DNA of 64,000 nt from Schmidtea nova (taxonomy: Eukaryota). The DNA is taken from positions 309,194,001-309,258,000 of the forward strand of contig CM097882.1 in assembly GCA_044892505.1 (NCBI GenBank), given 5' to 3'. Position 1 is the first letter of the stretch; every line of letters starts with the position of its first letter. Made by a program: the position numbers and the translations under genes. Below are positions 5,550-44,231 of the stretch, one piece after another. Under the pieces are notes generated by a model, which was not told the origin of the DNA, did no database searches, and saw only the letters and a list, made by a program, of their open reading frames with translations.

Positions 5550-6829
5550 GTCAAATTTTGTTTTCTAATTTTATATTCAAACATTGTTTTGAAAATATCT
5601 TTTTAACATTATGTGCTCAATGCGTCATGGGACGTGTTACCATAAACGCAAATTTCTGTAGCACGGATTTTATAAAATTATTTTATTTTTGCAATCAAAT
5701 GTTAAATTTATAATTGCTTATTTAAAAAAGTAAAATTTTCATTAAATCAAAATGGAATTTCAATAAAAAATGAATGTTTCTCAATTGTTTATATATGATA
5801 TTCTAAGATTTTTAATACGAATGAATTATTTTATATTCAAACTCTTATAAACTGAAAGTGTTTATTTCTTAGCTATCACACTGTATATTATACTTACATA
5901 AAATTTCTCTTACACAAAATTTTTGTTTTGTATTATAGGTAACTAGATGTTATTTTTCTATTTAATAAAAAGTGTTATTTTCTTAATTTAAAAAACTATC
6001 CATATTGTTGGTTGTGCGTGGTGATTTATTTAAATCTGCAGATGATCTGACCATCACTTATCTAGGGTCACGACAAAATACATAAAAAGCTTTTTGCCCG
6101 AATGCCCGTAAATACCCTTGATACTGCATATGTCAGACGAATGTGAATCAGCAAGTGAGCGTCTGTGTTACAACAATAAACCAACGAATTTAAATAATAA
6201 ACTGTATTTATACGAAAGAAAAGAAAACACTACTCACGGTGAATAATAACAAATGCCTTCTTATTTCAATTCGATTTTTTTTTGAAATTTTTCTTTTTTC
6301 TAGTACACTTAATTTTTTGTTAATCTCCAATTAAAATCTTGGTTTTTTGAATTTATATTTTGCTGGGTTCATGGAGGGGTTAGATGAAAAATGCTCTAAC
6401 AATGACTAGGGATCCCTCATCCATGATCATGCATAAAATTGCAATTCTACACTCAAGCGCCCTTGACTACTTCCCTATATAATCAAGTTGGTGATGCGCA
6501 GGGTGGTTAAACAATGATGGGCAGGTGAGCACTATTACTAGTACTACTCCCCATTTATGTTTACGGGTTCATTGCTGCCGTTAGAAGGACTTACGCTCAA
6601 ATCATCCGCTTAGGTATTCCGCAATAATCTTTTAGAAAATTTATCTTCAACATCGCTTATTCTGCATGACGTATTTCAACAAAATGCTCGCTTAATTATT
6701 CATTTGCCTTTATTAGGTATTTTGTGAGATGAGTTTATAGTTTTATTCTACAGTTATCTAATTATTTGTCAAGTTAATTAAATCACTTTAAATGAACAAT
6801 AACAATTTTAAGATAACACGAAAATTTAT

Positions 6830-7426
6830 TCAATCTTTAATTAGTTCAGTGAAAACTCCAGCTGGGGGAAAGATTTCCGTTAATAATTCCCCTTCGGTCA
6901 TTTGATGCAGGCCATCTACTTGGCTCTGTAATCGTTGGGCAAATAGTTTCCTTTGCCTTCGCCGTTTCTGCCCAATGCGCTTGCGTTTCTGGTGCGCATT
7001 TGCAGTTGAGGTGGATGGATTTGTTGCCGGAACCGGCTCGTTTTGGCTTCCGATTAGATCAGCGACGTCCGTGCCAATCGAGTTGACGATCTTCTTTTCC
7101 GATGTCCATTCCTGATATGTAACGGGACGGATTTGATCTCTAAGTTCTTTCTCAATATAGGAGGCAGTTACAGAATGGAGGCATTTTCGAAGCTCTATTT
7201 TAGTAGCCTCCCATTCCATTTTATAATCTGCTGCAGTTTGCTGGGCACGTTCGGTTTTACTGATTTGCTCCTTCATCCTAGCCGGAGCAAACCAGCTTTT
7301 GCGTAAATATGTGACCTGCGCCTCGGCTTTGACTAATTGCGCTTTGAGGAGACCCAATTCCTTGTCCTGGGCTCTCCGGATCCGCCACATCTTTTCTAAC
7401 TCCCTTTGTGCCAGATCGGTATTCAT
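6830..7426 (-). CDS. Family ORF B, 198 aa: coiled-coil-like N-half and Arg/Lys-rich C-terminal patch; unknown function
   Basis: Intact ORF. Motifs WFAPARM, TKIELRKCL, QIRPVTY and KRKRIGQKRRRQ recur in copies C, D, E, F, G and the 36 kb fragment. Confidence 0.8.
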   Translation of the reverse strand: MNTDLAQRELEKMWRIRRAQDKELGLLKAQLVKAEAQVTYLRKSWFAPARMKEQISKTERAQQTAADYKMEWEATKIELRKCLHSVTASYIEKELRDQIRPVTYQEWTSEKKIVNSIGTDVADLIGSQNEPVPATNPSTSTANAHQKRKRIGQKRRRQRKLFAQRLQSQVDGLHQMTEGELLTEIFPPAGVFTELIKD

Positions 7427-7620
7427 TCTACAATTGATGTACTATAATTACTTTTGTCACTTTATGGTTCAATTATGTGTAAAATTAAAAACCGGAATAC
7501 ATGATTATTAGGATTAAGAACGGGGTCGGTTTAGCAATACAGAACAAAGAAAAAACTCAAAACAAAACCACTGATGAACATTAATATTTTTACTCAGAAA
7601 CAAATTATTGTCAAAAATTG

Positions 7621-8100
7621 TTATCGCCGAAATAGGCTGTGCATCTCGTTGTTTATCGGCATCTGACGAAGGCGAGCCCAAGAGAATGAAGGTTGCCCTT
7701 TCCGGCATTCCTTGCCGAATGGTTTCCGCGGCAAAAACTCGTGCAGGCCCAATTGACACAATTCTCGGCGAGGGATATGTCCCCAATAAATTATACGGCT
7801 CGCTCGTCCTGCTGCGTCCTTTATTACCACGATCATTTGGCCAAACTTGTTTGAGTAAGGCCTTTGGGAAATTGGCCAGTTCGGTCCTCCACGATAGAGT
7901 ACTTGGTCACTTCCTCCTGTCCATATCGAAAACGGGCATTTTCGACCAAACCCATGTCTCCACTTGAACATTTGAGCGTTGAGGGTCCGCAATATCGGTG
8001 CCGGTAACTCCTTGAGTTGGGAGACCGTTTCATTGTCTGTATTCCATCGTTCCCAATTCCGCATTTGAGTCAATTGGTTCATAATCTCGGCTGTCGGCAT
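7621..8100 (-). CDS. Family ORF A, 159 aa; unknown function
   Basis: Intact ORF. Motifs LKxLP, KWR, KCPF, YRGGxxW and IYWxHIP recur in diverged copies. Confidence 0.8.
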   Translation of the reverse strand: MPTAEIMNQLTQMRNWERWNTDNETVSQLKELPAPILRTLNAQMFKWRHGFGRKCPFSIWTGGSDQVLYRGGPNWPISQRPYSNKFGQMIVVIKDAAGRASRIIYWGHIPRRELCQLGLHEFLPRKPFGKECRKGQPSFSWARLRQMPINNEMHSLFRR

Positions 8101-9258
8101 CTATATTACTTTATTGAATATAAACCATAGGATTTAACGGAGGAAATTTGTTGGACAATTTATTGATACCGCGTATAATCACAAAATTTAATTTAAAATA
8201 AGATTAATTTTATTTATCTTCGCCGTGATCTACCACGGTCGGAATAAAAAGTTCATAATTAGTCCTGTGCTATATACAGCATTCAGGAATTATAAAATTT
8301 ACTTTCAGAAAATGATTTTCCGCGCTATATACAGCGATCGGACTAGCTATTAGATAATTCCGCGTCATGTGCGACGATCGGTTTATTTTTAAATATTTTC
8401 AACTTGGTTTAGATTCCCCACTGCATTCCACCGCGATCGGAATTTATTTATCGGATGATCGTGACTGTGATGTGATTTTGTCTGTATTATCTAAATCAAT
8501 CTTATCGAGTCGTACTTTGACCCGTAATGAAATTCGAAATTCGATCGATTTGAATACCATTTTTCTAATTTAGATCGTCTCGCATATGCTCCAGAATCTC
8601 AAATTTTCACCCTTTAAGCTTAGTACTTGGGAGGCTAATACCTGACTTTCCTTCGGTGCTGCATACCTTCTGGTAGCTCTTTCCGCCTTTCCTACTGTGC
8701 CCCACGCTATGCCCTCTGTGCAACCGACTATGCGATATTTTAATTTTAGTTCGAAATTCGTCGAAAAATTTTACAATGCATTATGAAAATCTTTATCAAA
8801 TAACTAAGCATGAATCGAAAACCATTAGTACTAAATTAGCATCTTTACCCGTTCTCGAATTATGTTCACAAAATTAAAAATTACAAGAATAAAAAGGTTG
8901 AACCGCCATGTGAGACCGTGAGGCCCCACAACGACGACTCGGACTCCCTTGCCGCGTGAGCAGCCTAGGAAGTATAACTATATACATAGTTAAATTAAAA
9001 TATTAAAATAAAGTAAATTTAAAATATAAAATTATAATTGAAGAAAATCATGGATACATTAACATCATAAAATAAAACAAAAATAAAATATTACGTTCCG
9101 TACTTGAATGTATTATTGAATGTTTCCTCGGATTTGAAGTACCTCTGGTTCTCGAAAAATCGTTCGGTTAAATTTTAGTAATAAAAATAGTTCTTAGAAT
9201 CAAAGTTTAGTCTTGATTGTAAGTTTTGATAACAGTTGAGTTATGATTTTTGGATCGG

Positions 9259-9293
9259 TATTTATACTGATCCGTCTGGTTGGATTGACCAAT
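9259..9293 (-). promoter_or_regulatory. CCAAT box plus TATA box of copy A, pointing toward ORF A and ORF B
   Basis: TATAAATA on the minus strand at 9259-9266 and CCAAT at 9289-9293. The same 21-22 nt gap is seen in D (39571-39604), F (63769-63803) and G (30594-30625). Confidence 0.6.
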
Positions 9294-10249
9294 CAGGATC
9301 AGACCGTCCATCAAAGTATTTTTATTATTTTATTCTAACCTAAACATTATTTTGTTTCCTTTTCCGGTTTCTCGCTGGGTGATCCTGATTTTTCGAGTAA
9401 TTAATTAATTATTTGCACTATTATTTTATTTAATTCTATCTTTTCTTATTTCAGGCCCCCTTTTGTTGTTGTTTACCGGTTTATTTTCGAAAATTCCTTT
9501 TACTGAAAATTTATCAAATATTATTTGTCATTTGATTCTTGTTTTTAATTTGTTTTTATTGTTATTTTTATTTTTATTATTTCTTTATTATTTCATGTTT
9601 TCGCTCTTTTATTGTGTTTTTAGGTGATTTGGCGGGCCCAACAATTTTATAGTTTCTTTCAAATCTTTTTAAATTTCAAATTTTCTACCGTAATTTTCTG
9701 ATCCAATTTAATTTAATTTTTGTTTTCTTTTTAACCTTGTTTTGAAATTGGTTGAATGATAATAATGATAATTTTCAATTTTCTTTAATTTAGATTTTAA
9801 ATTTATAATTATTCTAAATTTTGTGATTAAAATTCCTATAGTAATTAGTTTACTATAGGAATTTATTTTGAATTTCTATCGCACGGCGATTAACCAAACT
9901 AAAAATAATAATAACAATAATAAAAAAATGAAGGGGGGGGGGCTAACCATTCATAACAAAGATATTTAATGCCGAGTGTTAACATAGTGACAATAAGAAA
10001 TTCCTGTTTGATAATTAAGACAACGGGTCTGATCACTTCGCTAAATTTATATCTCGTGGATTCACACTGTTTAGTAATTAGAAAATTATTCCTCCCCATT
10101 CTTCAGTGTCACTGATCATTATCTAATTCTCATACACTTTATAGACAGTTAAATGATATTAATTTTTTTAAACAATAAGAGCTGAGATGAAAACACATTA
10201 AATGAACAAAACTATAATTGTTGAACTACTACACTATGAGATGCACACA

Positions 10250-10530
10250 AATAGTCAGATTATGTATATAAAAAATTTGTCATCGGTATTAGCAGGATCC
10301 GGTGAGGCTCCGAGAGATTTCGTAATTGATGTTTCAGTTGCCGAACAGAACACGAATCTTCCGATCATTAGGAACTTCGCTCTACTGATAGTGCTTTGGT
10401 ATTGGATGAAGTTTCTCCTAGGTACCTCGCTAGGTGACTCCACGAAGTATTTTAAAGTGTCAGCCGGGTATTCACAATCGAGGTCGATAGGCTATTCGGG
10501 TACTTCGTGCAACACGATGTTTGGTTTTTG
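10250..10530 (-). pseudogene. Fragment of ORF A, copy-G subtype
   Basis: HEVPE*PIDLDCEYPADTLKYFVESPSE...GRFV aligns with copy G WHGSKPWPIDVDREYPEDLPGYFVESPTD...GRFV. Confidence 0.7.
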
Positions 10531-18479: not shown

Positions 18480-20311
18480 AAAGAGGCATGAGACAAGATT
18501 AAATTACTTACGAAGGAAAAAGCTGGATTTCCCTGTCGATCCTAAAATAGAAGAAAACAAAAATCAATAATTTTATTATAATAATTTAACTTGGTATATT
18601 ATAAATCAACCAATTAAAAGTGGTAAATCTTGAACTTACGTATATATATTTCTTCCTTTACGGCGCTGGTAGTCGTTGATATTGGCCCAAAAATGCTTGA
18701 GGTTAAATTTTCTAATTTACAATTTCGTCTGAAATCTGAAATTAATATAAAAATTCATATTCATAGCTAAATTCATAAGGTTAAATTAATATAACCTTAG
18801 AAAAATCTACACCGTTGCCGTTACTAAGGCATCGGCGAAATTTCAAATATTATAATTATCGGATTTTTGATAAAAATGGAATTAAAATTATAAAGCAAGA
18901 TAGACATTAGGTATAGGGGATAAGAGAATTTTAGTTAAAATTTACTGAGACAAAAATATATAAATTTAAAAGTCTAGAAAATAATAAAGTTTGGTTAAAA
19001 TCGTCAAAAAATCAAATACCCCGAATATATGTGATGATCAAAGATTTTTCGATCCTCGAATTGAGTTGGCGATGGTATACTTGATTATAAGCTTAAAAAT
19101 AAAAAATGAATGAGCGAAAACTTCTGTGTTTCGAGACATGACTGTGTATAATAGACGGTTGTGAAAATAATCAATAAATTTCTATCGGTAAAATTATTTC
19201 ATCTTACTGATTTAAAATGAATATCTATAATTAAATTATGATGCTAAATAATGGCTTAAATGTGTTTTGAATGTGTGATTTTAGATTTTAGATTTCAGAA
19301 ATGAATCTCGAAGAAAAATTTGAGGAGATGCATCGGTTGATTTTGGAAAATGCCCGACATAATCGCCGGGTAGATCAGTGCTTTGCCGAGCTGGAAAAGG
19401 CGAAAACATCAGATTCCGACGCTTTGCAAATTATGACCTCCTGGATGGAGAAATGTCGAGCGCGGTGCAGATATATGGAGTCGACCTGGTCCGACAAGGA
19501 GACCGTCGACAAACTGAAGAAGCAGAACCAGATGCTTCTACAACAGGCTGTGGAAGACGCAATGAGATTGCGCGCATGCCGTGTCACGATGCGAGAGCAG
19601 GAGCTCTTGATCGAAAAATTGAGGGTGGATAGCGGCATTATCACTGCCATCTTGCCGAAATCATCGTTTCCACCCCAAGAATTGTTTCCAGTGAGGGTAG
19701 AAAAAGAGATCCTAACCCCTCCGGTTCCAGTGAAGTTTACGCGGCAGAAACCCAACAAAGGAGTGAGGGCTCGACTAAGACGTCGTCAGGAAGCGCGATT
19801 GCTGGGGCAAATACGCAGAGTCATCAGAAGTGATAGACATAACACTATTGTGATTTCTTGAATTGAACAAATAATATTTTCATCTTGTGAATAATGTTAT
19901 ATTTATTACCTTACTTTGTAGTTTATGTTATTGTTTTTGTTGACATTAAAGTTTTTGTGTTTGAAATATTTATTTGTTTGAATGCGTGAAGGGAATAAAT
20001 TGAATAGAATCAACTGAGGTTCAGTAGTAAATTTTAACTCGATATAACTTATGATTTTTTTTAAATAATGCATAGGAGGGACAAAATGGGCATTAAACCT
20101 TCTATCGGTAGCCCTTGGACCCAGGAGATATTCGGTCAATCATAGTTTCGTATTGACGACGCTCACTGATTGCGAATTCCCACCAATTTGTTGTATTACC
20201 AACGTTACATTGTGACGGGCAACAAGATGGTTATTTCAAAGTTTTGTATGTTGAGTTGTTGATACGAGCCATAGCAACGTCAAGGTCATATTGACGATCA
20301 ACAACCCACCA
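18480..20311 (+). mobile_element. Copy B1, divergent subfamily of the TG...CA family; 5' end not located
   Basis: The 3' end is CAACAACCCACCA (20311), with the family terminal motif in reverse orientation at 20100-20170. It shares upstream and downstream blocks with 42950-44231. Confidence 0.6.
19301..19861 (+). CDS. Divergent ORF B-like protein, 186 aa, intact
   Basis: Helical N-half with YMESTWS (compare YLRKSWF) and a basic patch KPNKGVRARLRRRQ. It occupies the ORF B position just before the terminal motif. Confidence 0.6.
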   Translation: MNLEEKFEEMHRLILENARHNRRVDQCFAELEKAKTSDSDALQIMTSWMEKCRARCRYMESTWSDKETVDKLKKQNQMLLQQAVEDAMRLRACRVTMREQELLIEKLRVDSGIITAILPKSSFPPQELFPVRVEKEILTPPVPVKFTRQKPNKGVRARLRRRQEARLLGQIRRVIRSDRHNTIVIS

Positions 20312-20780
20312 ATCGGACTATTGCGTCTATAGCTACATCCACTCTTGGCATCTTCGATAGAAGACGAGGCAATTTTGGGTTTCCTTTGACTTTATAAATA
20401 CGTGCTGGGTTCATAGAAGGGTTGAGAAAATAATACGTTATGGTACTAGGGAAACCCTATCCATATTCATACATAAATATATACTATTTCATTCGAGCGC
20501 CCCTAACTACTCCCTGTATAGTTATGTTGGAAATGCGCAAGGTGATTGGAAAATGATGGGCAAATGAGCTCCATTTCTGGAACTACTCCCCATTTATTTT
20601 AACGGGTTCCCGCTGCCGTTAGGAGGTTTTACGCTATTTATTTTCTTCAATAATTACGCTTGGTTCTCTTAAATAGATAAACACTATTTTTCAAATGTGA
20701 TTTAATTTACTTATAAATTTCTTAAACAAACAAAACGACAACAAAAACAAAATGACAATGTACGACATAAACAATTTGTT

Positions 20781-21375
20781 TTATTTTACAAAAAATTCGG
20801 GAAAATCTCCGTCGAGCGGAAGGATCTCGGTCAACAAATCCATTTCCGTTAACTCTACCATTTGATCAATTTGCGCCTGTAATTGTTGGTCAAATAACTT
20901 CTTTTGTCTCCGGCGCTTGGAGCTGATTCGTTTTCTTTTCTTAGTGCAGTTGGGGATCGATACTACTTTGATGGCGCTGGTGTTACCACTATGACCGGCT
21001 CTAAACCCTTGACGTCTGTTCCTACGGAACACTTGGGTTTCTTCTCCTTCACCAGTTTTGGTAGGTAATGAGCCGGATTTGGGTTCTGAGTTTAGAGTCG
21101 ATGAATGAGGTTGTTATCGAGTGGAGGCACTTTCGTAGTTCAATTTTGGTGGCCTCCTACTCGACCCGGTATTCATCTGTTGTCCGTTGAGCCCGTTCTG
21201 TGTGAGCCATCTGATCTTTCATTCTCGATGGTGCAAACCAGCTCTTTCGCAAGTATTGTATCTACGCTTCAGCCTTAGACAATTGGGCCTTTGTTTGCCC
21301 GATCTATTTTTCTAAACTCCGTCTGATTCTCCAAGCTTTATCCAGTGCGATCTGGTGATTGGATTCTTGGTTCAT
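20781..21375 (-). pseudogene. Copy C ORF B, with stops and frameshifts
   Basis: WFAPSRMK, EATKIELRKCLHS and KRKRISSKRRRQKKLF are recognisable. TAG occurs where copy A has Gln and Trp. Confidence 0.8.
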
Positions 21376-21548
21376 ACTATATAAAAGAAAATGTATTCTG
21401 ATAAATTGGATAGCTACTGTAGTTTCTATTATATGTTAGAGAAAATGTATTTTACCTTAAATAAATACGACTCAAATAACAGGACAAAATTTAAATTAGA
21501 ACAACAATTTATTTGATTTAATTCTATCACACAATTAACACTATAAAT

Positions 21549-22050
21549 TCATCTACCCTTCCCGAATACATGAGCGACGTGGAGGCCTTGGTTTATAGAG
21601 ACTCGTCGAATCTCTGCCAAAGAGCAATCGGACAAACTCTTCTCATGCCCTTTCCCGAGAGGACGTGGAGATGTGAAGAGGTTGAGTCCCAAACCGGCGA
21701 GTTCGCCCTGAGGGATATGCTCCCAATAAATCTTCTTCTGATCTGGACCATTTATAATAATTATCAAGCGTCCGAACTTCGGAGAATTGCAGTTGTTGGC
21801 CGCGATTGGCCATCCAGGACCTCCTCGGTATAGTATCCGGTCCCTGTCGGTTTTACAAGTGAAAAATGGGCATTTCCCCCCATTTTTCCTTCCACTTGAT
21901 CATCTGCGCATTGATTGTCCTCATGATCGGGGGTGGCAGGCCTTTTAACTGCCGATTGGCTCTTGTTATTGAATTGTAGACGGGCTTTGATAACCCTCTC
22001 TGTGATTTCACAAATTTTTCTACGGATGTTAGCTCCATCTGTTTTAACAT
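21549..22050 (-). pseudogene. Copy C ORF A, one frameshift in a G6 run near 21878
   Basis: Removing one G restores KWKEKWGKCPFF...ILYRGGPGWP...KKIYWEHIP. Confidence 0.8.
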
Positions 22051-25000
22051 ATGAAATATTGGTAGACTGATTAATATAAATTCCTTTCAAAATCTATGTC
22101 AAAATCGAAATTATTGCTCCAATTTAGAAAATGAGAAAATTATTATTGTTACGTGTGACGCAAACAAAAATTGGTTTGGCTAAATTAGTTGGGATAAAAC
22201 CGCATTATACTATTGGTTCTGTATTTAATTAAGAAGAAAGAAAAAAATCTGATAGACATTTGTCGAACACTGTCGCTTTGTACAGCGATCAGAACTATTT
22301 AAATTATTATTTATCATTAACCTGCGCTATCTACAGCGATCAGGACTATAAAAATAAATTCAAATAATATCTGTCGCTATATACAGCGATTAGATTTAAT
22401 AATACTGTCCCATGCGATTTTATTATGTGAATAGACCAAGACGAGATAAGGCGTGTAAGTAAATTTTTATCTGTGTGCGTGGATCAACTAATTCGCATTG
22501 TCCATATCCGAACTATCCATGGAATGCAATCTTATCAGCTATGTGAAATTGATCAAAATGTAAATCGAGGGTTTATTTGACTATTGTTAAAATTTATTGG
22601 TGTTTTTAACCGGTCAGTACAAACTATCCCTGTGCGTTATTAATTCAAAGTTTGTTACTTGAACAAGATGTTTTACAAACCAATGTCCTTAAGCGCAATA
22701 CGAATTCCCAAAAAACGGTGCCTACCCCTATGTATCTGTGTAATACAAATCCAATTTTTGTTTAAATAAGTACCGAAGCTGTTCCTAAGAAGTTAAGGCT
22801 ACTGATAGGTGATCCTAGTTAGAATCGTATCACTCTCTGTTTATTAAATTTATTTCAACCCTGTCCTATGTTGAAATTCAAATTTGTTTACCCAGTGAGG
22901 AATCCTTTCTGCTTCTAGGTGAGTCAAATTCAACTTGGTTTAATAAATGTACTACAAAAATTGTTCCTATGTGCAACCCTTAAAAAGTAACATCATAAAA
23001 GTTATAACTCACTCACCACCTAGTGGATCTAAAAAGCCCCACTAAGACGGCTTGCGTCCTCGCAGCGTTAGCTACTGAGGAAGCATATCTATTTAAATAA
23101 TAATAAATTAAAATGCATCAAATTTGAAAATAAAATCATTAACATAATTTCAACAAAATCATGGGAATATTAAAACATATAACAAATCAATTCGAAACCA
23201 CTGAACAATAAAATTAATTTACTTCTTTCAATAAATTCGGTTTTCTTGTAAAAATTCAACTATTGTCACTGAGTGCGTAAAAACGGTTTAATCGCTTTAA
23301 GTCCCTAACGCAAAAATATTTCTCCAAATTCTGATTTTCGGGTCGGTATTTATACTGATCAGGTTGGCCAGATTGACCATTCAGGATCAGACCGCCCTTC
23401 AAAGTATGTTCATTATTTTTAATTAATTAGTACCTTATTCTCGTTCAGTTTTATATTTTCTCGGCTGGTGGTCTCAATTTTCTAAGTAATTTATTAATAA
23501 ATTGTACTTTAATTTGTTAATTTTTAGGTAAATTTTCCATTTTTCTATTTTGGATTCGTTGTTGGCCTCTTCTTCACTTATTCGGATTATTTTTATGCTA
23601 TTTATTTTTATCCTTTTCCTTAGGTTTTCTGTGTTTCAATAATATATATTTTTTTATTTTGTTTTAATTATTGTTATATTTTTTGCATTTTTAGATTTTA
23701 TGGTGGGCCCAACATACGTATTAAATAATTCGGAAATACCCACAGGGAAAATCCCGCTACTAATACAAAATTATTTTTAATAAGAAACTCTAAACAAGAC
23801 CCGAACGAAAATCACTGCTAAGAAAACATATTGAATAATTACAGCACTTCAATCATTAGTATGCGGAGCTATCTAAGAACCATGCCGAATATTCCAAAAG
23901 GAGCGAGTAACATTGCCTCGCCATTTTTCATTGTTCTTCAAAAGTCGTTAAAAGTCGTGCCCCTTCTAGCCGCTTTTTTCATATGCTCTTCTTATGGCTA
24001 AGGTTTGGTGATACGTAGATTTTGGTGTGGTTACGATGCGCAGAGGTATAAATTTCTTGGACCTATCCGGTGGACTTTGCTAGGAACTGGTTGAGGGGTC
24101 GGATTCTCATAGCTAACTCCATCTATACATACGTATCTAATTTTTTTTTCCGACTCAAGTTCTTGCCCTTCTTTTCCAAATTAAGTTAATCGATTGATTA
24201 TTTAGTGCATCATATTGGTCAATCTTTATACATGATTATAATTATGGCATGGGCTTATGTATCTGTATATTTTGTCAATGAAAGAGAAAAATTCTTCGGG
24301 TTTGCCATAAATTCTGGCAATCATGCATTGGTGAAATCATTTTTCAAAAATCTTTGAAGAAAACTAAATAAAGTAATTCAACAAGAGAAACATTATTATT
24401 ATTTCGGAAGAAGATCATTTAAAAAATCTTTCTGAGATTTATATTTAAGGTGATAAATCTATATTTTGAGGATATTTTTAAGTTTAAAGGAAATGTCGCT
24501 TTGACAATGGAAAGCTGTCATTTTCCGCTTATCATATTGAAATTTCGTCTAAATAATTTTAGCTATCCTTTTCTGTTTCGACATTTCTTTTTTATAGTGT
24601 AATTTCTTGTTCCATGCTTTCACAACATTAAAACTCGCTGTAGCGACATTAATACTCAATAATCTTTACTTTTTTTCTTCAAAGCATATTTAAATTATTA
24701 CATTGTCCATCTAAATTTGATGAATTTTGTTTTGCGAAAACAATTCCATTTGTGCTTTGTTAATTTTAGGGTACCAAATTCGATTTTGACATTTGTTTTA
24801 ACGTTTAACGTATGAATTTATTAATTAAGCCGTTTTCTTATTTTTTGGTGGACGATATCCTCTTCTCTCTGCTATTCGCTCATCATTCTCCGGTCTGATG
24901 GATCCATAGCAATCACCCTCCTTCATAACTACCATTCCGACGGAACCGTTATTATAGACTGACTGGTATCCGACAGTTGGTTCTCTATTGCAATAGAGGT

Positions 25001-25755: not shown

Positions 25756-28545
25756 GTGATGAGATGAATTTACCATTTTATGACAATCTATAACAAAGTA
25801 AGGTATACAATCGCGATACGTACTTAAATGCAATTTAATTTAAATTCAATTATTTTTTTCAATACATAATATGTAAATTATATTAACTATACATATTAAC
25901 CACTTCTCCAGGGTTAAAGGCCTAATGAGGTCGGTTAACTGGGTGGACAATTGCCGTTTTCTATCCTCGCCGCTTCTAACTCTACTCTTTGATCTTCTAT
26001 GGTTCTCATTGCTCGATGTAACTTCTCCTTTACCACATTCATCTCAGCTGGAGAAAAATAATTGTCTTCAAGCTCTATGATCCGTCGCTTTAGTCGGCTG
26101 ATTTCTCCTTGGTTCAATGACATCGTTGGCCTTAAAATAAAGTAATGAAATTATCATATACCTAACTCGTTCATCATCGTTTTCTGTTCCTCATCATGCA
26201 TTCATCGTGCGTCTTTCTCCTTGTGCTGAAGTTTACTGAAATCTTACTCTCCACCTACTGACTGTCCTTTACTTAGCTTTTCTCATCGGGTCTACATCAC
26301 TCTCCTATACTCGTCGTTATCCCAAAATCATTATTACTACTTTAGTTACTACCCTATTACAATCAATAATAAATCAGAAGCCTTGATAGTCGAAATTTAA
26401 TATTTTTAAATACCAAAAATGCAAGCATTACAGATATAAATACATATATACACAATCACGACAAATCGATAAAGTCTATGTACTCTTCCTCTATATCCAT
26501 TTCCACGATGGCTGATGGACTATAGGGCGAATCCGTGGATGTTTCTGGTGGAGCGGGACCTAATACGAACCTCCCCAAACTCCAGAACTCCTCTACTAGG
26601 ATTTTCCCTGTTAAAAAGATTTTGAATCGCCCCCGAATATCCGTGGGCGACTCAACGAAGTATCCCGGCAGGTCTTCAGGATATTCTCGATCCACGTCGA
26701 TGGGCCACGGCTTGCTGCCGTGCCAAGTTATCGTATCGGTGCTGTCTCGTGATAGACTAAACGAAGGTATCAGTCCCCTCTCCGTGAAAGATGAGCGATG
26801 TTCGTCCACGATCTGCCTCTCAAGATCGGTGGGAATATTTTTGAGTGGTAACGCGCAGATGAGATAATTATTTACTGGTTCTGTCTCTTGTTATAAGACT
26901 CTTGCGTTTGATTATTTCCCCGATGAATTCGGATACAGACTTTCTCTATTGATTTGCCGGCCATTGTTAAATAATTTAATGAATTTATTATAATTATTAA
27001 TTAAGGAAAACTCCACGGTTGTGTGTTTTAGCCGCAAGAAGATGGTAGGTAATACAAGTTTGGACATGAGGCGATCTGCCCAGTTTACTAATACGGTAGG
27101 GTTCTACAGTGTTCATGAGTGCTCTCGAGCGCTCTCATTTTTGGAATATCTTCAGTTATTTAATTGGCATGATTCTACTCAAGTGGAGAATATCCCTTCT
27201 GCTAATTGCACATGCCGCCTTAAGTATAACGTAAATTACTGGCTTTCGTCGTGCAAATTGAAATTAGATTCTACTCGCAATCTTCAATTGCACTGTACAC
27301 TGCCAGCTGCCACTTGAGTTTCCCAATCTTCCCCACTCGCGAGTAAATAATCACTCTCCACAATTTCAGTCGACATTATATTGAAGTACACTTGACTTTT
27401 TCGCGTGAATTCATTCTCAAGAACGCCTTGAATATTTCTCTCAATATGCTCTCTTAATTGGAAAGGAGTGGTTTAGAACATTTACTTCACATTCTCTGCT
27501 ACTCGAGAGTTGATTTTTTGCATTTAGTAATACTACGATATATTGCGGGATTTCAGTTCACTGTAGGATCATCTACGTAAATTTTAATTACGGGTTGAAT
27601 TTATTAATTTCCGTTCAATTCGATCATGATTATCTCGACTCATCAATCGTCAGGGGTTCTGTCTCAACTATCAACGAAAATTTCTCAAAATCGCATTCGC
27701 TACTTTACTCACATTTCCTTTATAATGGCTGGTAATTTATAAGGAAGACTGATGTTCCTGAGATTTCTGACTTACGACAAGTTTGGGTTGGACCTACCTT
27801 GGTGTTCGGCCTGGGGATTACTGCTGACGTATCATGGTAAATTTAATTCGGTGTGCACATTAAACATTTCCTAGGTTCGCTAATTTATTGTTGCGGAATC
27901 TACTCGACCAGTTCTCCGACATTCATCACTGTGGTGGGAGTTTTATTTTATCCGGCGGGCATGTCGGAGTGTGTGGGAGGAGTTCAGGATGCAAAGACGA
28001 TGAACCAAAGTCTTAATCGTCGTCCAGTATTTCCCATAAAATTAGGGACATTTTCAATATTATTTATCAAATGGAAACTAGGTGCTTATCTATTCTTGCG
28101 CTAGTTTTTCTCAAATTTTCTCAATTTTCTCAAAAACATCATTTGGCCATTTCTAGCATACCAAAATAAAACTAAAAAAAGTTTTAAGTCTATTGGAAAT
28201 AAAAAACTTAGTTAAATACAACTGGTTAAAAAAGAAATTTACTTTATAAAAAAATATTAATTATCTGTCATTTTTTTTGAAACTTGTTTATGTATTCAAA
28301 TTTTTGGTAATTTAGTTTTTAAAAATATAAAGTAGTTTTGGCTAATTGTTATTTTATTTGAATTGAAATTGGAAAATTAAATGCTCTTTTTCAATTAACA
28401 TTAAAAATTATTATTTTTGCAACCTTTAACAATTTCTTATGCAATTCAAAACAATCAAACGGAAGCTCGGTAGCCAAAAACTAGTAAAAGCTGGATCACA
28501 TAAAGCTGTAATAAAGAAATACCTTCAAATTCCGATAAGAAACAA

Positions 28546-34688: not shown

Positions 34689-36074
34689 GCAGCACCGATA
34701 TATAAAATTTTGTTATTATCGATCATTATTTGCTCAGTTTCGATAAATGGCTAAGTCTATTTACAAAACGATTTTAATGACTCTGAAAAGTGCATTAATA
34801 TTTAAAATGATAAGTAAACTAAATGTCCAATTTTAAAAATAGTTAAATTATTATTGAGCCTGTGAGAGTTTAAAGTTATATATTATAATTATTAATGTAG
34901 TTTAAGTAACAGCTAAATAATTGTAAAAATCACAGCTTTTAAAATAAAGCATATGCACATGTTTTGATTGTATAATTTGATTCTAAGCTAAATGCTATTT
35001 ATGAATTCAAATAGACTCCTTGAGTGTCTTAAGCAATTACTTACAGAAAACATGATCTAACTTTTAAAAAATTTAACAAATATTATTCTCATAAAATTTA
35101 ATTTAATTCAGGAAACGTTATAAATATTTTATAACGTTAGGTTATTTGCCTTTGAAGTTTCAGTAATACATGAATTTAAATCTCAGAGAATGAAAGTGAA
35201 TTATTAAATTAAATTGAAGTATATACGAAAATAATTATTGATGATATAAGCATTACCGCATTTGTGTCGTTGCTGCCTTTTGGCAATGCATATTGAAACG
35301 CAGTACAATTCTTAAGATATTTAAATATATATAGCTATAATAAAAAATAATTATTTGATGTTATTGTTATTGCCAAACAAAAATAAGTGAATACAATTTA
35401 CATATTTATTAAAATTTTCTCCTAGCTTTTTTGTCTGCAAATGTATTAATTATATCAGTATAATCAATATTAATGTATATTCTCTTTTAACAATATAGGC
35501 TGTGTTTAAACAAGAGCTGCAAATCGAATTCGAACCATGAACTGCTTCGGTTCACATTATTTAAAGTTATCACCAGTTAAAGCCAAAATTTCAGCCGAAT
35601 CATGTTTAACTAAAAAAATTCTTTTAATTTCTATTGCTATATTTTTTTAAATCATTTTCTGAAAAATAATTGTACAAAAATCAATTAAATTAAAACATTT
35701 TTCACGTTAAAGAAAAGTACCTTATTATAAAGTATTTTTTAGTAAAGTACTTTTGTGCTAAACTTTTCATTATTTCTCAGTTTAAAGATACTGTTATCAT
35801 TAAAAATATTGTCATATAAAAATTACAGTTAAATTCAACAGATATTATTCTTGATATTTGGGATTGAAAATAACTAAAATACTCCTAGATTAGATTTAAT
35901 TGATACAAGTATGGAGGAATAAATCGATAGCTTATTCTTTTTCATTTACTACTCTGTCTCACTTGACTCAGAAAAATATCAAATTTTTTAAACACGACCC
36001 CTTCTAGTTCTCACGACTTGTACTTTCTCTATATAAAATTTACGAAGGTAATCTAAATACATTCATTTCAACAA

Positions 36075-36780
36075 AACTGGGTTTTTTGTCAAAAAACACA
36101 TTGGAAGGATCTTGGTGATCAACTCCGATTCGGTCAGGTCGTCTAGTCGGTCGACTTGATTTTTCATTTGTTGGGCAAATAAATTCTTTTGCCTACGCCT
36201 TCTTGCACCAATGCACTTGTGCGGCCCTGATGTCTTGTTCGATGCCTCCTCTGGCTTGTTTCCTCTATTTTGGTCGAATCCGACTTAATCGTTTGTATCC
36301 GTGCTCATTGAACAGAAGATCTTTAATTTGGCTTGCCGATTTTGTAACCCTTCGGTGATGGGTTTCCCTCGCAAGCCAGAGATGGAGAAACGGCCCATTT
36401 TCAGTTCCTGACATTTCCGAAGTGGTCGTGTGGAGCTACCAACTTTAACTCGAATTTTGAAACTCTGGTTGTGGAATGTGCTCCCAGTAGATCACCTGTT
36501 GGGGTCGCCCGATTTGGTATTTGATGAGAATCATCAAACATGCATATTTATTAAAGTAGCTGTTGTCCGTTGAGATCAGATAATTCATCCCTCCTCGATA
36601 TCGGATCTCCTCGAGGGGATTCTCCATTATGGTGAAGGGACACTTAGAGCGGAATTCCTGGCGCCATTTGCATATTTTTGGACGTCGATTGTATGTCGGA
36701 TCGATGACATTAGGTTTTTAAGCGACTTGATTAACCTCAGCTGCTGTACCTCGTATCTCTCCTTGGCTCAAATTCGCCAG
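36075..36780 (-). pseudogene. Internally deleted family fragment joining ORF A to the C-terminus of ORF B
   Basis: KWRQEFRSKCPFTIM...IRYRGG...VIYWEHIP, then CIGARRRRQKNLFAQQM...LTESELITKILP. Confidence 0.75.
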
Positions 36781-37546
36781 TTATTCTCATTGTCTTTCTC
36801 CAAAGTGCATTTTTTGTCCATTTTCTTATAAAATTCATTGGCATCAATACATTGTTGATCATTAACCTTGGTTATCAACGCAGTTCACCCTGCTGAAAAC
36901 TTTCATTTATGTTATTTCGTCTTACTAAAATTTATTTTCAACGATGCTCTCTGTTATAATAGTCTCATTTGTCCACGAGCCTTCCGGCCCCTCATATTAC
37001 CTCCTGGATCTCCATGATGTGCAGTCAAAACAAAATCCAAAATTTTTTACATCTCCACCTGAAAATTCTCTGTCGTGAAATCAGACTCAACTATCAAGTT
37101 TATCTCTGAAATTACCCTGGCGTAACATTGCTGGTTTGTTGGTTGATGTTTAACAAGGGATTTTGTCTGATGTTAATATTAGGGCAATTCCACCATCATA
37201 AAAATATTCTCCCTGCTGATGCCAATGACTCGCCTCTAATTGCTCATCATGTTGGTACTGCATCCAGCGTTGTAGTCTAATAGGGCAGGTGAGCAACCTT
37301 GGCGGTTACCATTTCCTTGTTAGAGCTACGGGTTCACCACTGCCGATAGAAGGCCTGTGTGGATTTATTTCGGTCCCAATTTTATACCTTCACTATATTT
37401 ATTTACTACGACTCACATTCTTTATTCCTCCGGTTCTCGTCATATATTTTATTTAATTTTCTTATATTACATCGTTCCTTATTTATGCAGACTATCCAAC
37501 ATTCATTTCATCATACAGGAAGACAAGTCATGTTCAATACATATAT

Positions 37547-38111
37547 TCAACCTAATAACACCGTGGTATTGATGACGTTCACTAGCTGCTTCTCCGATAA
37601 GCCGCTTAGCAGATCTACCTCTATTCTTAGCCTTTCCGCGTAGGCCCTCATTTCCCTACGACGCTTAGCTCCCAATCAATTTCTCTTTTTCGTCCTGGAT
37701 GACAATGCGTCTACTCTCGGCGGTAGCGGTATCACTCTTTCATTGAGTGACGTGAGAACTTCCTGGGTTTGCGTCTCCATACTCCTATGAGTAGGAGTCA
37801 TCCAGCGATCAAACGTGCTTGCCCTGATTAGCGGTTTTAATTGTTGTTCGATGAACTCTTTTGTAGTCGCCCTCAGGCAACGATTTAATTCCAATCGGAC
37901 AGCGGCTGTCTCCCGAGCCTGCTCCTCCAGCGCTCTCTCGGCGTTGTTGAATCTCTTTCACCTTCTCGGGGCTGAACCAGGCCCTTTTCATTGAATCGAT
38001 CTCTACGTTTTGTCGATTTATGTAGTGTTCCAATAATCAGATGCGCATTTGCAGTCGTCGGCGTATACGCTTTTCGTCAACCGGTCCATCTATAATTTGA
38101 ATGAGGGTCAT
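37547..38111 (-). pseudogene. Copy D ORF B, with stops and a frameshift
   Basis: AWFSPEKV, RLELNRCLRATTKEFIEQQLKPLIR and GAKRRREMRAYAERL are recognisable. Confidence 0.75.
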
Positions 38112-38324
38112 GTTAAAACTAGCTTAGTCGTTTAGCCACACCACGCACCTCTCTTGGTTCATTCATCAGGTCATTGGGTTAACAACTTCTCAACTCATCA
38201 GTCACCTCAACATCCAACATCAAGTTAGACAAGTCAGATACAACAATCGATTTATTTCAAACTATTATGACACAGTACTGATACTCAAATGTTGTCCAAG
38301 TCAACCCAGTCTTTGTCACACGGG

Positions 38325-38807
38325 CTATTTTTTCTTCGGGTTCCGCCTGGCCAGAAGTATTCGAGGTTTTTTTTTTTTTTTTTTTATGCCCCATGGCGGA
38401 TTAGGGTAATGCCGTGGTTCTCCTGTGACGACATCCCGCGGTTGATCCAGTAAGACGAATCCCATCTGTTGTAAAGTACGACCCGGAATGGGTATGAACG
38501 ACAATATCCATCGGGGGACATTTCTCTGATCATCGAATTGAACGAACCATTTCCGCATATAGATACGCGTAGAAGAGTCTCGTAGTGGCCAGGATGAGTC
38601 TCCCTCCCAGCGAATTCTAACCACGTATTGGTCCGGATTCAGATTTACCGTGGAGCCCGTATGCTCCCGTTTCCAATACCGTAAACAATGATTGGCTTTG
38701 GTTTGGATGATATTTGGGACTGGTGAGATTCCTTGTGATTCCTGGAAATTTGATTTCACCGTTCTACGACGACGATTTTTCCTAGATATTGGTAGTCCCT
38801 CGTTCAT
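38325..38807 (-). CDS. Copy D ORF A, 160 aa, with a poly-A run near the C-terminus
   Basis: RIRWEGDSSWP...FVQFDDQRNVPRWILSFIPIPGRTLQQMGF aligns with copy A VLYRGGPNWP...IVVIKDAAGRASRIIYWGHIPRRELCQLGL. Confidence 0.7.
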   Translation of the reverse strand: MNEGLPISRKNRRRRTVKSNFQESQGISPVPNIIQTKANHCLRYWKREHTGSTVNLNPDQYVVRIRWEGDSSWPLRDSSTRIYMRKWFVQFDDQRNVPRWILSFIPIPGRTLQQMGFVLLDQPRDVVTGEPRHYPNPPWGIKKKKKKPRILLARRNPKKK

Positions 38808-40621
38808 GTTTCTCTACAATAAGTTTAACTGATCAATCGGCCTAAACACCCCCACTTCATTCATACTCAACCTGCATCATTCCAATTCTCACGCAATCCT
38901 GCACGCTTATTGATCGCGTCCTCCTGACCTCATTCCGTTTACGTCATACATTCTCAACGTTCGTCATTTCATCGTTCTATCAGCATACTTACATACATGC
39001 CCCTTGGTTAGTATATTATGTTTCCCCACTCAATCTCCATGACCTTAACCGTGGTTAGGGCCTCAGACAACTTTCGTGTTTACTTAATCATTCGTTTATC
39101 GAATTATCTGTCCATGTGGTGTTGTAATGAACTGTTATTTCTCATCTAGAGTCTATGCATGCGGTCATCGATCTGTTTAATCATCTATTCTCTCGTCATT
39201 CATCACATGATCATCTAGCGCCCCTGTGTGCATCCCCTCCCGATCCATTGGTTATTTGAAGCTACGCCGCATCGGCTATCACCCATGAGGTATGGCTCTG
39301 AGAGGCCAAATTTTCACCCGTTGGGTCTGAAGACCGTCGGGACGTCTTCCTATTCCCCATCCAAACCATTCAAGCAAATCATGAGAGTTTCGAAATTAAA
39401 AACAATGTCAATGTATACCTTTTATTTCCAACAAGTTTCACAGGATATAATTGATTACAAAGTGCTTTTGGTATCAGGTTTATACTGGTATAGATAGGTA
39501 CAAAACTTTCTTTACACCAGGTAAAAATGCTGAGTGATTTTGATGCCCTCTTACTGAATTTGGCTGCCGCTTATATAGCCATTGTAGGTTGACGGCTAGC
39601 CAATCAAAATCGTTCTACGACTTTATAATGCGCTGAATTTATTTTATTTTTGATTCTTGTCATTTTTACCGTGGGTGTATTTATTATGAATATTTTGTAT
39701 CGCCAGTATTTTGTTACTGTGTTTCTGTCAAATTTGAGTGGCCTACCCATTCATTTAATGACTCCTACTTGGTTTATTTTGTAGTTGTAATTTTATCTTT
39801 CTACGCTTCACTGCTTTTATTTTCATTGATTTATTCTCCAATTGCTGGTAATTTGCTAGTTATTTTATCTTATTTTTCTTGCTTTTTATGTTAATTTGCC
39901 GGGCCCAACAACGTCGAAAAATCACAGGACCCGTTCCTGGAAAATGCCCATTCAAAAAATACAGAATTTCTGAAAATACCCATCTAATTTCTATAAAATT
40001 TACCACCCGCAAATCTCTCTTCAATGTCTCTAGTACTTATATCTAAAGTGTATGTTGTTTTTGATAACGACCTGTGATTTTCTAGCCTGCTTTTGCTAAT
40101 GTCATCTAGCTTTATTTTAATTCTGTTTTTATGTCTCTTTGAAATTGGACCAGAGCTAGCACTTTCATTTAAACCAGCAATAATCTCTAAATCATGAAAC
40201 TCTTTTTTGAAAGTACATAAAATAGCTTCATGTCAAATTGTCCAGAAGCAAAGTCTCTAATTGCAATTAACAATTATAATTCGTCGCTGGGTCTTTGTAG
40301 CAGGTTGTTACATTTCCCACGTGATTCTTTTATCCCATTGGTTTTGCTGCTCTCAATATTTCGACTAATCGGTATTCTGTTTTTGTTTCGGTTTCCATTT
40401 TCTACAATATTATTTACATTGGATTCTGACGTCGCTTTTTTTGGATTTCTACATTTATTTTTACTCATGAATATACACAATTTTTTTCGCTTTAATTTCT
40501 TTTTACACTGCTGGATGAATGACCATCCAGAAACCAAGAAGCTCAATCCTCCTCTTGTTCATTCGTTCTTTTATTTGTTAAGTGTTTAATTTCTATGGTT
40601 TGCCACTGGTTTGTTTCTTTG

Positions 40622-42949: not shown

Positions 42950-44231
42950 ATTCTCTTGAAGACAAGACAAATTATTCGCTAATTTCTTAGTTTTTCCCTG
43001 CTATGCCGTGACTCTCAGGAATAGACAAATCTTAAATGAAAAAAAAGAAATGGATCAGTTATGTAAATAAGACGATAAAACTTATCAAATCAGAAAAATC
43101 CAACCGGGAAGAAATCTTGTACAATAAATAAAAGTGATAAATCAATAAATATGAGAATATCTACAATAGTGCAATTAGCCAATCAGATTGTTTGATAGAC
43201 TTATTCCAGAACTTTGATTTAAAGTATTTGTGAGAAATTTTTATATAGAGCATTTAACACAATCATAGTAAAGGGTGTTAATGAAGATCTTTGAACTTCG
43301 TAAATTAATTTCTAGATAACTTTCATAATATTTTTTAACCTAAAATAAAATGCCGTTGCTAAGGTGTCGGTGGAAATTTTAAAGTTGAATTTCTGACAAA
43401 AGTTTTTTATAATTTATAGGACAAAAGAGACAATAGAATTAGGATATAAATAAAGCCTAATTAAATTTTTAACATTAAAAAACAGAAATTTGAAAGATCA
43501 CGAAAATAATAGTTATTTAGTCCAAAATAACAGGCATTGAATATCCCCTAACATATGCATTTTTAAAGGAATATCTGATCTACGAATTGAGTTGTGATAA
43601 TATATTTGAGCATGAGCTTGAGACTAAAATAAATGTGCGAAAATGTTTTTGTCTTGAGAAAGTATAGTGGTTGGATGGAGTAATTGATTTTATTATGCTT
43701 TAGATTTTCATTGGAAAAATTGAGGGAAAATTTATTTGAAAGCGCTGCTGATCACTTTAATCGATACCCGATTTGGATTTAAGATTAGAAAATCAAAAGC
43801 AGGAACACTAGCTAGAACTCTTAACCCTCTTCAAAATGATTGAACTGATTCTGTTTTGTATGTGGCTGGGATACATTTGCTTAGACCATTATTCTTGAAT
43901 GATGCAGTTTAATTTGATGTTAATAAATGTGGATGCTTATTCTGAATCGCCGATTAAAATCCTATTGATTGCTTATATATTAATCGTTGAATAAAAGAAT
44001 CAAACAGGCATTAGACCTTCTACCGGTAGCCATTGAACCCATTGTGACGTTCGGTCAATCATAGTTTCGATTTTTTCGACGCTCACTGTTTGCGGGCATC
44101 CACCCATTTGTTTCGTTACCAACGTTACATTGTGAAGAGCAACAAGATGGTTAAGCTAATGTTTTATGTGTTGAGTTGTTGATAGGAGGCACTGCAACTT
44201 CAAGGTCATATTCACGGTCAACAACCCAGCA
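42950..44231 (+). mobile_element. Copy B2, B1-like with no recognisable ORF
   Basis: 44015-44231 is closely similar to 20095-20311 and ends CAACAACCCAGCA. 43350-43660 is similar to 18805-19140. Confidence 0.65.

What the first reader, a model, noticed from the sequence alone, without database searches (positions are those of the whole stretch)
6361..9643. Family of about 3-kb TG...CA units with 4-bp TSDs, two conserved unknown ORFs and no mobility enzyme
Seen: copies A (6361-9643, TSD ATTT), C (20403-23714, TSD TACG) and D (37129-39910, ACAT/ACGT) have both ends. F, E, G, B1, B2, H1 and the fragments at 10 kb and 36 kb are partial. The shared layout is TGTTGGG, A-rich tract, CCAAT/TATA, hairpin leader, ORF A, ORF B, structured end, CC(C)AGCA. 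The two ends are only 7-bp imperfect inverted repeats and there is no internal LTR pair. Known: TG...CA with a 4-bp TSD is the footprint of Gypsy-type or Ginger DDE integrases. Inference: these are either giant solo LTRs that carry their own genes, or a non-autonomous class mobilised in trans. The protein motifs persist across heavily diverged copies, which suggests selection. I cannot assign either ORF to a known family.
Basis: partly seen in the sequence, partly recalled or inferred. Interest (0 to 1): 0.9.

Follow-up and report, generated by a model that had tools for sequence, protein, structure and literature searches.

The report
Gene-carrying giant solo LTRs, probably planarian
The 3-kb repeats are real insertions with clean ends and 4-bp duplications, and are most likely lone long terminal repeats left by giant gypsy-like retroelements of a flatworm genome, unusual in that each carries its own promoter and two conserved genes of unknown function.

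Summary
Three complete units (A 6361-9643, C 20403-23714, D 37129-39910) begin TGTTGGGCCC and end CC(C)AGCA in ORF orientation. They carry 4-bp target-site duplications and have no internal LTR pair or long inverted repeat. At least seven more partial copies bring the family to about 30% of the window.

Both ORFs evolved under purifying selection. Synonymous sites are saturated while only 26-45% of non-synonymous sites differ. Conserved non-coding parts are a Y-box plus TATA promoter, tandem hairpins in the leader, an AG just before the start codons, and a roughly 270-nt 3' domain.

Neither ORF matches any protein family, solved structure or database protein. The window's own ordinary Gag also finds nothing, so the databases are blind to this host's repeats.

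The host looks like a flatworm, probably a planarian. Planarian giant gypsy-like "Burro" elements must have multi-kilobase LTRs. My best reading (0.6) is solo LTRs of such elements carrying an accessory two-gene cassette.

I could not show a pair of units flanking gag-pol. A trans-mobilised stand-alone element therefore stays open (about 0.17). Interest is moderate.

The parts
6361..9643 (-). Unit A, complete (3283 bp), both ORFs open; flanked by ATTT/ATTT
9631..9643 (-). 5' terminal motif TGTTGGGCCCGCC of unit A. The first 10 nt are identical in C and D.
9261..9293 (-). Y-box (ATTGG) plus TATAAA, about 350-385 nt from the 5' end. Conserved in A, H and D, with a variant (AATGG) in C. Inferred Pol II promoter.
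8218..8342 (-). Three tandem ~24-nt stem-loops with a GTANAT loop in the leader of A. C has 3 and H has 2.
7621..8100 (-). ORF A of unit A, 159 aa, intact; conserved core KCPF...YRGG.xWP
6830..7426 (-). ORF B of unit A, 198 aa, intact. Predicted all-helical: long coiled-coil-like helices, a disordered linker, then an arginine/lysine-rich helix.
6361..6638 (-). Conserved 3' terminal domain of unit A ending ...CCCAGCA. Shared blocks in 7 copies of at least four diverged lineages.
20403..23714 (-). Unit C, complete (3312 bp), flanked by TACG/TACG. ORF A remnant has at least 1 frameshift. ORF B remnant has at least 1 frameshift and 3 stops.
37129..39910 (-). Unit D, complete (2782 bp), a diverged lineage, flanked by ACAT/ACGT. 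Its own 160-aa ORF A-like frame (38325-38807) is open. Its ORF B remnant is broken: the matches lie in several reading frames and the one tblastn piece holds 1 stop.
61108..64000 (-). Unit H, runs off the window end. It is inserted into the reading frame of a LINE-like reverse transcriptase. ORF A is open (62358-62858). ORF B remnant (61587-62207) has 1 stop.
19292..20311 (+). Copy E, 5'-truncated, another lineage. Open 186-aa ORF B-like frame (19301-19861) and the 3' domain ending at 20311.
43948..44231 (+). Fragment F: 3' domain only, 82% identical to that of E
44232..46229 (+). Copy G, 5'-truncated. ORF A remnant (1 stop, truncated), ORF B remnant (3 stops), 3' domain ending CCAGCA.
25790..28060 (-). 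Copy near 26 kb, cut by the N gap at 25570-25755 (left unfilled). Diverged ORF A-like frame 26459-26890 and an ORF B remnant. Approximate bounds.
36066..36735 (-). Fragment next to D: truncated ORF A and ORF B remnants, 1 stop each
10258..10491 (-). Fragment: ORF A-like piece of the 26-kb lineage

Best explanation
The units are solo long terminal repeats. They were left behind when the two LTRs of a gypsy-like LTR retroelement recombined, so each keeps the 4-bp duplication made by the element's integrase.

The parent elements are probably giant Burro-type elements of a planarian-like flatworm. Several old lineages are present (A/C/H, D, E/F, G, and the 26-kb/10-kb pair).

Unusually, the LTR is a whole transcription unit. 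Its parts, in order:
- a 13-nt integrase-facing end
- an A-rich tract
- a Y-box/TATA promoter about 350-385 nt in
- a roughly 1.1-kb leader with tandem hairpins
- ORF A and then ORF B, each start codon sitting just after a splice-acceptor-like AG
- poly(A) hexamers
- a conserved tail of about 270 nt ending in CA

I infer that the two ORFs are accessory genes of the retroelement. They would be expressed from the LTR promoter through spliced or trans-spliced messages. ORF B would be a dimeric, arginine-rich nucleic-acid-binding regulator that may act on the hairpins. Intact solo LTRs such as A could still express them.

Shown: the ends, the duplications, the family, selection on the ORFs, and the conserved motifs. 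Inferred: LTR origin, host, expression route and protein function.
For: Insertion footprint:
- TG...CA ends with a 7-nt imperfect inverted repeat and 4-bp duplications at all three complete copies. Chance of a 4/4 match is 0.006.
- H interrupts a LINE reverse-transcriptase frame.

LTR-like architecture:
- No long inverted repeat or internal direct repeat.
- The ends are asymmetric, as U3 and U5 ends are. Only 10-13 nt are conserved at the 5' end, against about 270 nt at the 3' end in 7 copies.
- The promoter motif is conserved even in D.
- AATAAA or ATTAAA lies within 150 nt after ORF B in 6 of 6 copies.

Genes under selection:
- Synonymous differences 0.78-0.96 against non-synonymous 0.26-0.45.
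- Differing bases at codon positions 1, 2 and 3 are 0.42, 0.32 and 0.65.
- GC3 is 0.45-0.55, against 0.29-0.40 for every other coding stretch in the window.

Expression signals:
- Hairpins show changes on both sides in 5 of 8 pairs, and 0 of 500 shuffles reach the observed score.
- An AG ends within 2 nt of the ATG in 4 of 6 starts, against 14.5% background.

Host and precedent:
- The best named hit of a pseudogene is the flatworm Macrostomum, with unnamed hits at 88% and 78%.
- Background GC is 27-31%.
- Planarian Burro elements have interiors up to 25 kb and exceed 30 kb with LTRs (PMC6431247).
- Gag remnants lie in the window.
Against: - None of about 10 copies in the window adjoins a primer-binding site, a polypurine tract or a gag-pol interior. 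No two copies form a matched pair.
- Family-derived DNA is about 19 kb, while gypsy-like interior remnants total under 2 kb.
- A transcribed segment of 2.4-2.9 kb inside an LTR, as R or U5, would be unprecedented to my knowledge.
- The promoter lies upstream of the ORFs, unlike retroviral genes that sit in U3.
- The host assignment rests on one pseudogene.
- No Burro LTR sequence was compared.
- Poly(A) hexamers are expected by chance in AT-rich DNA.
Confidence: 0.6

Rival explanations
1. A stand-alone, non-autonomous DNA element. The whole 3-kb unit is the mobile entity. It is cut or copied and inserted by a retroviral-type DDE integrase supplied in trans by a Ginger-like transposon or a gypsy-like element. 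The two ORFs are its own cargo or helper genes.
For: Every copy seen stands alone with its own duplication. No interior is ever attached. The 5' end fits the TGTNR start that I recall for Ginger elements (memory, not tested). The ORFs are kept by selection across lineages, as expected if the unit itself is what replicates. The ends are more conserved (83-84% between A and H) than synonymous sites of the ORFs.
Against: There is no terminal inverted repeat beyond 7 nt, whereas DNA transposons of this kind have tens to hundreds of nt. The two ends are unlike in length and content. No DDE transposase of that type was found among the window's long reading frames that I scanned. The copies are old and diverged, with none recent.
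Confidence: 0.17
2. A new kind of retroelement parasite. The unit is a complete, LTR-less RNA-borne element whose two proteins package its transcript, and it borrows reverse transcriptase and integrase from gypsy-like elements.
For: It has its own promoter, hairpins in the leader that could serve as a packaging signal, a basic helical ORF B, and an integrase-type footprint.
Against: A transcript that starts after the TATA box cannot regenerate the roughly 380 nt upstream of it without LTR-type strand transfers, and the unit has no terminal redundancy. ORF A and ORF B show no likeness to the window's Gag.
Confidence: 0.06
3. The unit is an ordinary LTR and the ORFs are not genes. On this view the motifs persist only because the copies are related.
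For: Most copies have broken frames. No homologue exists anywhere searched.
Against: The pattern of differences is frame-specific, with third positions differing twice as often as second positions. Non-synonymous change is well below the saturated synonymous change. Open frames survive in four diverged lineages (A, H, D, E). GC3 is distinct. Acceptor-like AGs sit at the start codons.
Confidence: 0.07

Closest known systems
Burro / GYPSM1 giant gypsy-like LTR retroelements of planarians (Grohme et al. 2018, as summarised in PMC6431247)
   Same: The likely host group is the same, and the genome is very AT-rich and repeat-rich. Element size implies LTRs of several kb, matching units of 2.8-3.3 kb. 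Ends and duplication are of gypsy type. These elements have thousands of copies and carry accessory ORFs.
   Different: No sequence comparison was possible. The sources I could read describe accessory ORFs in the interior, not inside the LTR. No Burro-type domains (MATH, BIR, ankyrin, BCL2) were seen in the window ORFs I scanned.
Ogre elements of legumes (LTRs 1.9-6.5 kb, extra ORF of unknown function; PMC6431247)
   Same: Giant LTRs in a gypsy-like element, plus orphan extra ORFs.
   Different: The host is a plant. The Ogre extra ORF lies in the interior upstream of gag, not in the LTR.
Retroviral genes lying in the LTR, such as the MMTV superantigen gene in U3 (from memory, not tested)
   Same: A protein-coding gene is duplicated with the LTR and kept by selection as an accessory function.
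   Different: There the gene lies upstream of the LTR promoter, in U3, and there is one gene. Here two genes lie downstream of the conserved promoter. No sequence likeness was found.
Ginger DNA transposons (from memory, not tested)
   Same: 4-bp duplication, TG...CA-type ends, and an integrase related to that of gypsy elements.
   Different: Ginger has long terminal inverted repeats and its own transposase. These units have neither.

Membership tests
LTR of a Ty3/gypsy-like retroelement (solo LTR) | 5'-TG...CA-3' ends with a short imperfect inverted repeat | tested here: met
   TGTTGGG...CC(C)AGCA in A, C and D; 3' end also in H, E, F and G
LTR of a Ty3/gypsy-like retroelement (solo LTR) | Target-site duplication of 4-6 bp flanking the solo LTR | tested here: met
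   ATTT/ATTT, TACG/TACG, ACAT/ACGT; chance of 4/4 is 0.006
LTR of a Ty3/gypsy-like retroelement (solo LTR) | Promoter and polyadenylation signal in one orientation (U3-R-U5) | tested here: inconclusive
   Y-box/TATA is conserved. Poly(A) hexamers follow ORF B in 6 of 6 copies but are expected by chance. No transcript data.
LTR of a Ty3/gypsy-like retroelement (solo LTR) | The same sequence occurs as a direct pair around an interior with primer-binding site, polypurine tract and gag-pol | tested here: inconclusive
   Not seen for any of about 10 copies in the window.
Burro-type giant gypsy elements of planarians | Host is a dugesiid planarian | tested here: inconclusive
   Pseudogene best named hit is Macrostomum at 52%, with unnamed hits at 88% and 78%. 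AT-rich genome. The species was not identified.
Burro-type giant gypsy elements of planarians | Sequence identity of the unit to a Burro LTR | not tested
No reference sequence was at hand.
Ginger-type DNA transposon, non-autonomous copy | Terminal inverted repeats of tens to hundreds of bp | tested here: not met
   Only 7 nt, 6 of 7 matching
Ginger-type DNA transposon, non-autonomous copy | 4-bp target-site duplication | tested here: met
LARD / TRIM non-autonomous LTR elements | Two LTRs around a non-coding interior | tested here: not met
   No direct terminal repeats within the unit
Polinton / Maverick derivative | 6-bp duplication and long terminal inverted repeats | tested here: not met
   The duplication is 4 bp and there is no long inverted repeat, although a Polinton-like polB remnant lies at 53497-55762

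The most novel reading that the evidence does not exclude
The 3-kb unit is itself the mobile element. It would be a self-contained promoter-plus-two-gene cassette with integrase-type ends that spreads without LTR pairs or any enzyme of its own, using a retroviral-type integrase in trans. That would be a class of eukaryotic mobile element not yet described.
Probability: 0.12. Interest if true: 0.85.

Novelty: new variant of a known kind. Interest (0 to 1): 0.5.

Why it matters
If these are LTRs, they show that a retroelement lineage can keep a complete two-gene expression unit inside its LTR for a very long time. Every insertion, and every solo LTR left after the interior is lost, then seeds the genome with another promoter and possibly another expressed copy of two orphan proteins.

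The likely host group is studied for stem cells and for PIWI control of transposons. There, thousands of such units would be a large and so far unannotated source of transcripts, piRNA targets and regulatory DNA.

The two proteins, the hairpin array and the conserved tail are concrete handles for asking how giant retroelements regulate themselves.

Tried and rejected
Protein searches, all blank:
- Pfam on ORF A and ORF B of four lineages: nothing above noise.
- PDB by sequence: nothing.
- Word-indexed search of 5.8 billion proteins with ORF B: nothing.
- Exhaustive profile search of 1.84 billion representatives with ORF A: two hits, both translated tandem repeats or bacterial repeat proteins, rejected.
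- AlphaFold models: ORF A too poor (pLDDT 52); ORF B helical (pLDDT 77). Foldseek against PDB gave nothing at E <= 0.001.
- ORF profiles against the window's Gag: no likeness.

Control: the window's own Gag with two zinc knuckles also finds nothing in the 5.8-billion set. The blanks therefore say little about novelty.

RNA searches:
- Rfam: no family in the window at gathering score; in unit A and its flanks (6300-9700) at E <= 1, only one sub-threshold snoRNA-like hit.
- No tRNA genes.
- Consensus fold of the 3' domain: not supported.

Searches for other copies:
- Exact look-ups of window proteins in public assemblies: not on record.
- Scans of metagenome contigs (2) and viral contigs (1) with ORF A and ORF B patterns: no relatives.

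Other checks that led nowhere:
- A conserved splice donor after the TATA box: not established.
- Continuation of the 36-kb fragment on the far side of D as a nested insertion: only low-complexity matches.
- LTR pair around the gag remnant at 49 kb: none.
- Unit A as the 5' LTR of the Gag-bearing element at the window start: rejected, because A has its own duplication and no primer-binding site next to it.
- Species of the host via UniParc and SRA identifiers: unresolved.
- Grohme et al. 2018 is not held in the paper library.
Full report
**1. What is there**

In ORF orientation (the minus strand of the window), unit A (6361-9643) starts TGTTGGGCCCGCC and ends CCCAGCA. It is flanked by ATTT on both sides. 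Unit C (20403-23714) has the same ends and TACG on both sides. Unit D (37129-39910) starts with the same 10 nt, ends CCAGCA, and is flanked by ACAT and ACGT.

With the window's base composition, a 4/4 flank match has probability 0.006 and a match of at least 3/4 has 0.07. The 13-nt start motif occurs 6 times against 0.9 expected. Unit H (61108 to the window end) has the same 3' end and cuts the reading frame of a LINE-like reverse transcriptase.

Inside unit A there is no direct or inverted terminal repeat beyond the 7-nt imperfect one.

**2. Extent of the family**

As DNA, A, C and H align only in patches at 67-84% identity. These patches are the last roughly 240 nt, a 220-nt patch near the 5' end, and parts of the ORFs.

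At protein level, and with profiles built from the pieces as they stand, remnants of ORF A or ORF B appear in A, C, H, a fragment near 36 kb, G (plus strand, 44-46 kb), D, and a copy near 26 kb. E (plus strand, 19-20 kb) has an open ORF B-like frame that shares its motifs by eye but stays below the search thresholds. Very diverged ORF A-like frames in D, the 26-kb copy and a 10-kb fragment share a [YW]xGxxxWP[IL] core.

A profile of the 3' end finds seven full copies of a roughly 270-nt domain and two weak fragments. In all, the family makes up about 19 kb, or 30% of the window, in at least four old lineages.

State of the genes (counts only):

| Copy | ORF A | ORF B |
|---|---|---|
| A | open | open |
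| H | open | 1 stop |
| C | at least 1 frameshift | at least 1 frameshift and 3 stops |
| 36-kb fragment | truncated, 1 stop | truncated, 1 stop |
| G | truncated, 1 stop | 3 stops |
| D | own ORF A-like frame open | broken |
| E | missing (5'-truncated) | ORF B-like frame open |

**3. Are the ORFs genes?**

Between copies, the share of synonymous sites that differ is 0.78-0.96, which is saturated. The share of non-synonymous sites that differ is 0.26-0.45. Between A and H, bases differ at codon positions 1, 2 and 3 in 42%, 32% and 65% of codons.

GC3 of these ORFs is 0.45-0.55 in every lineage. It is 0.29-0.40 for the Gag remnants, LINE, hAT, polB and the pseudogene in the same window.

An AG ends within 2 nt of the start codon in 4 of 6 recognisable starts, against a background of 14.5%. 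All 6 have an AG within 8 nt, against a background of 36%. In H and E these are textbook acceptors.

I conclude that both are, or were, real genes under purifying selection while the lineages diverged. They are probably reached by cis- or trans-splicing.

**4. Conserved non-coding parts**

- The 5' 10-13 nt.
- A Y-box (ATTGG) followed by TATAAA or TATATA, about 310-385 nt from the 5' end in A and D and at the corresponding place in H, whose 5' end lies beyond the window. C has a variant.
- Two or three tandem 24-nt stem-loops with a GTANAT loop in the leader of A, C and H. The 14-nt core motif gives 10 matches where 0.4 are expected. In the stem-loops 84% of cells are paired and 5 of 8 pairs change on both sides; no shuffle of 500 reaches the observed values.
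- AATAAA or ATTAAA within 150 nt after ORF B in 6 of 6 copies. This is weak evidence in AT-rich DNA.
- The 3' domain.

The ends of A and H are 83-84% identical, while third codon positions differ by 65%. The cis parts are therefore more constrained than the proteins.

**5. What the proteins look like**

No Pfam family matches in any lineage. There is no PDB sequence match. ORF B has no hit in 5.8 billion proteins. The ORF A profile gave only two spurious repeat hits among 1.84 billion representatives.

The ORF A model is unreliable (pLDDT 52). ORF B is modelled as long helices, a disordered linker and a basic helix (pLDDT 77). Neither model finds a fold at E <= 0.001, and neither resembles the window's Gag.

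One control matters here. That Gag, an ordinary retroelement protein with two CCHC knuckles, also finds nothing in the 5.8-billion set. The databases hardly cover this host's repeats, so 'no homologue' is weak evidence for novelty.

My functional guess for ORF B is inference only. I read it as a dimeric arginine-rich nucleic-acid binder acting on the hairpins, or on the dyad DNA that encodes them.

**6. Host**

A chimeric intronless ORF at 11636-12622 joins part of geranylgeranyltransferase-I beta to the N-terminal domain of ribonucleotide reductase. Its transferase part is 88% and 78% identical to two unnamed proteins. Its best named hit is the flatworm Macrostomum lignano at 52%.

Background GC is 27-31%. 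hAT, Polinton-like, LINE and gypsy-like remnants surround the units. This fits a planarian, but the species was not identified.

**7. Comparison with what is known**

Planarians of the family Dugesiidae carry thousands of giant gypsy-like 'Burro' elements. [quoted passage not shown] They also carry accessory ORFs and have been proposed to be integrated proviruses (PMC6431247; see also PMC11410931 and PMC8532177).

Units of 2.8-3.3 kb, with gypsy-type ends, a 4-bp duplication, unlike ends and a promoter-to-poly(A) layout, are what solo LTRs of such elements would look like. I could not compare sequences, and I found no description of genes inside those LTRs.

Against the LTR reading:
- No copy here touches an interior.
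- The family outweighs gypsy-like interior remnants about ten to one.
- A 2.4-2.9-kb transcribed segment inside an LTR would be exceptional.

The stand-alone, trans-mobilised element therefore stays a live rival. It lacks the long inverted repeats that such DNA elements have.

**8. Verdict**

The best explanation is gene-carrying giant solo LTRs (0.6). I rate it a new variant of a known kind, with interest 0.5.

**9. Conduct**

- I did not fetch Burro-type proviral contigs. That comparison is referred.
- The N gap at 25570-25755 was left as it is.
- Possible slip 1: early tool and script outputs printed the bounds of reading-frame pieces of broken copies, which imply roughly where the frames end. 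My alignment and dN/dS calls then used those bounds as piece references. Outputs after one search give no new piece bounds, and this report gives counts and outer bounds only.
- Possible slip 2: profile HMMs were built in the scratch folder for searching.
- All comparisons of broken genes were made piece by piece.

Noticed in passing
window 11636-12622 (+): One open frame without introns joins about 200 aa of geranylgeranyltransferase-I beta to the N-terminal domain of the ribonucleotide reductase large subunit. This looks like a chimeric retrocopy or captured gene fragments. The transferase part is 88% identical to an unnamed database protein.
   Followed up: partly
window 2-1114 (-): Gag-like frame with two CCHC zinc knuckles that runs off the window start. 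It belongs to an LTR retroelement in the same orientation as unit A, about 5.2 kb downstream of it. It has no hit in the 5.8-billion protein set.
   Followed up: partly
window 49165-49821 (-): Second retrotransposon Gag remnant (Pfam Retrotrans_gag, E 1.7e-06) with no LTR pair or pol found near it.
   Followed up: partly
window 57054-61107 (+): LINE-like element with three long frames, the last carrying a reverse-transcriptase domain. That frame is cut by the insertion of unit H.
   Followed up: partly
window 31865-34364 (+): hAT-type transposase in two frames (DUF4371 and the hAT dimerisation domain).
   Followed up: no
window 53497-55762 (-): Polinton/Maverick-like protein-primed DNA polymerase B remnants in several frames.
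   Followed up: no
window 2551-4277 (+) and 15302-16854 (-): An inverted pair of another repeat, 86-93% identical. Weak matches to the units' 3' domain lie just beyond each (4615-4737 and 14571-14709).
   Followed up: partly
window 46416-46985 and 51282-51925: Two tandem arrays with periods of 15 nt and 46 nt. The first is bracketed by a 91-nt direct repeat at 99% identity (46359-46449 and 47120-47210).
   Followed up: no
ORFs of units A, H, D, E and the 26-kb copy: GC3 of 0.45-0.55 in a genome whose other coding sequences here have GC3 of 0.29-0.40. The cause is unexplained; possibilities are expression-linked codon bias, foreign origin, or a constraint on RNA.
   Followed up: partly
window 20311-20403; 44231-44232; 36735-37129: Copies of the family lie tail to tail or abut one another: E and C are 91 bp apart, F runs directly into G, and the 36-kb fragment sits next to D. 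This suggests repeated insertion into the same neighbourhood or into older copies.
   Followed up: partly
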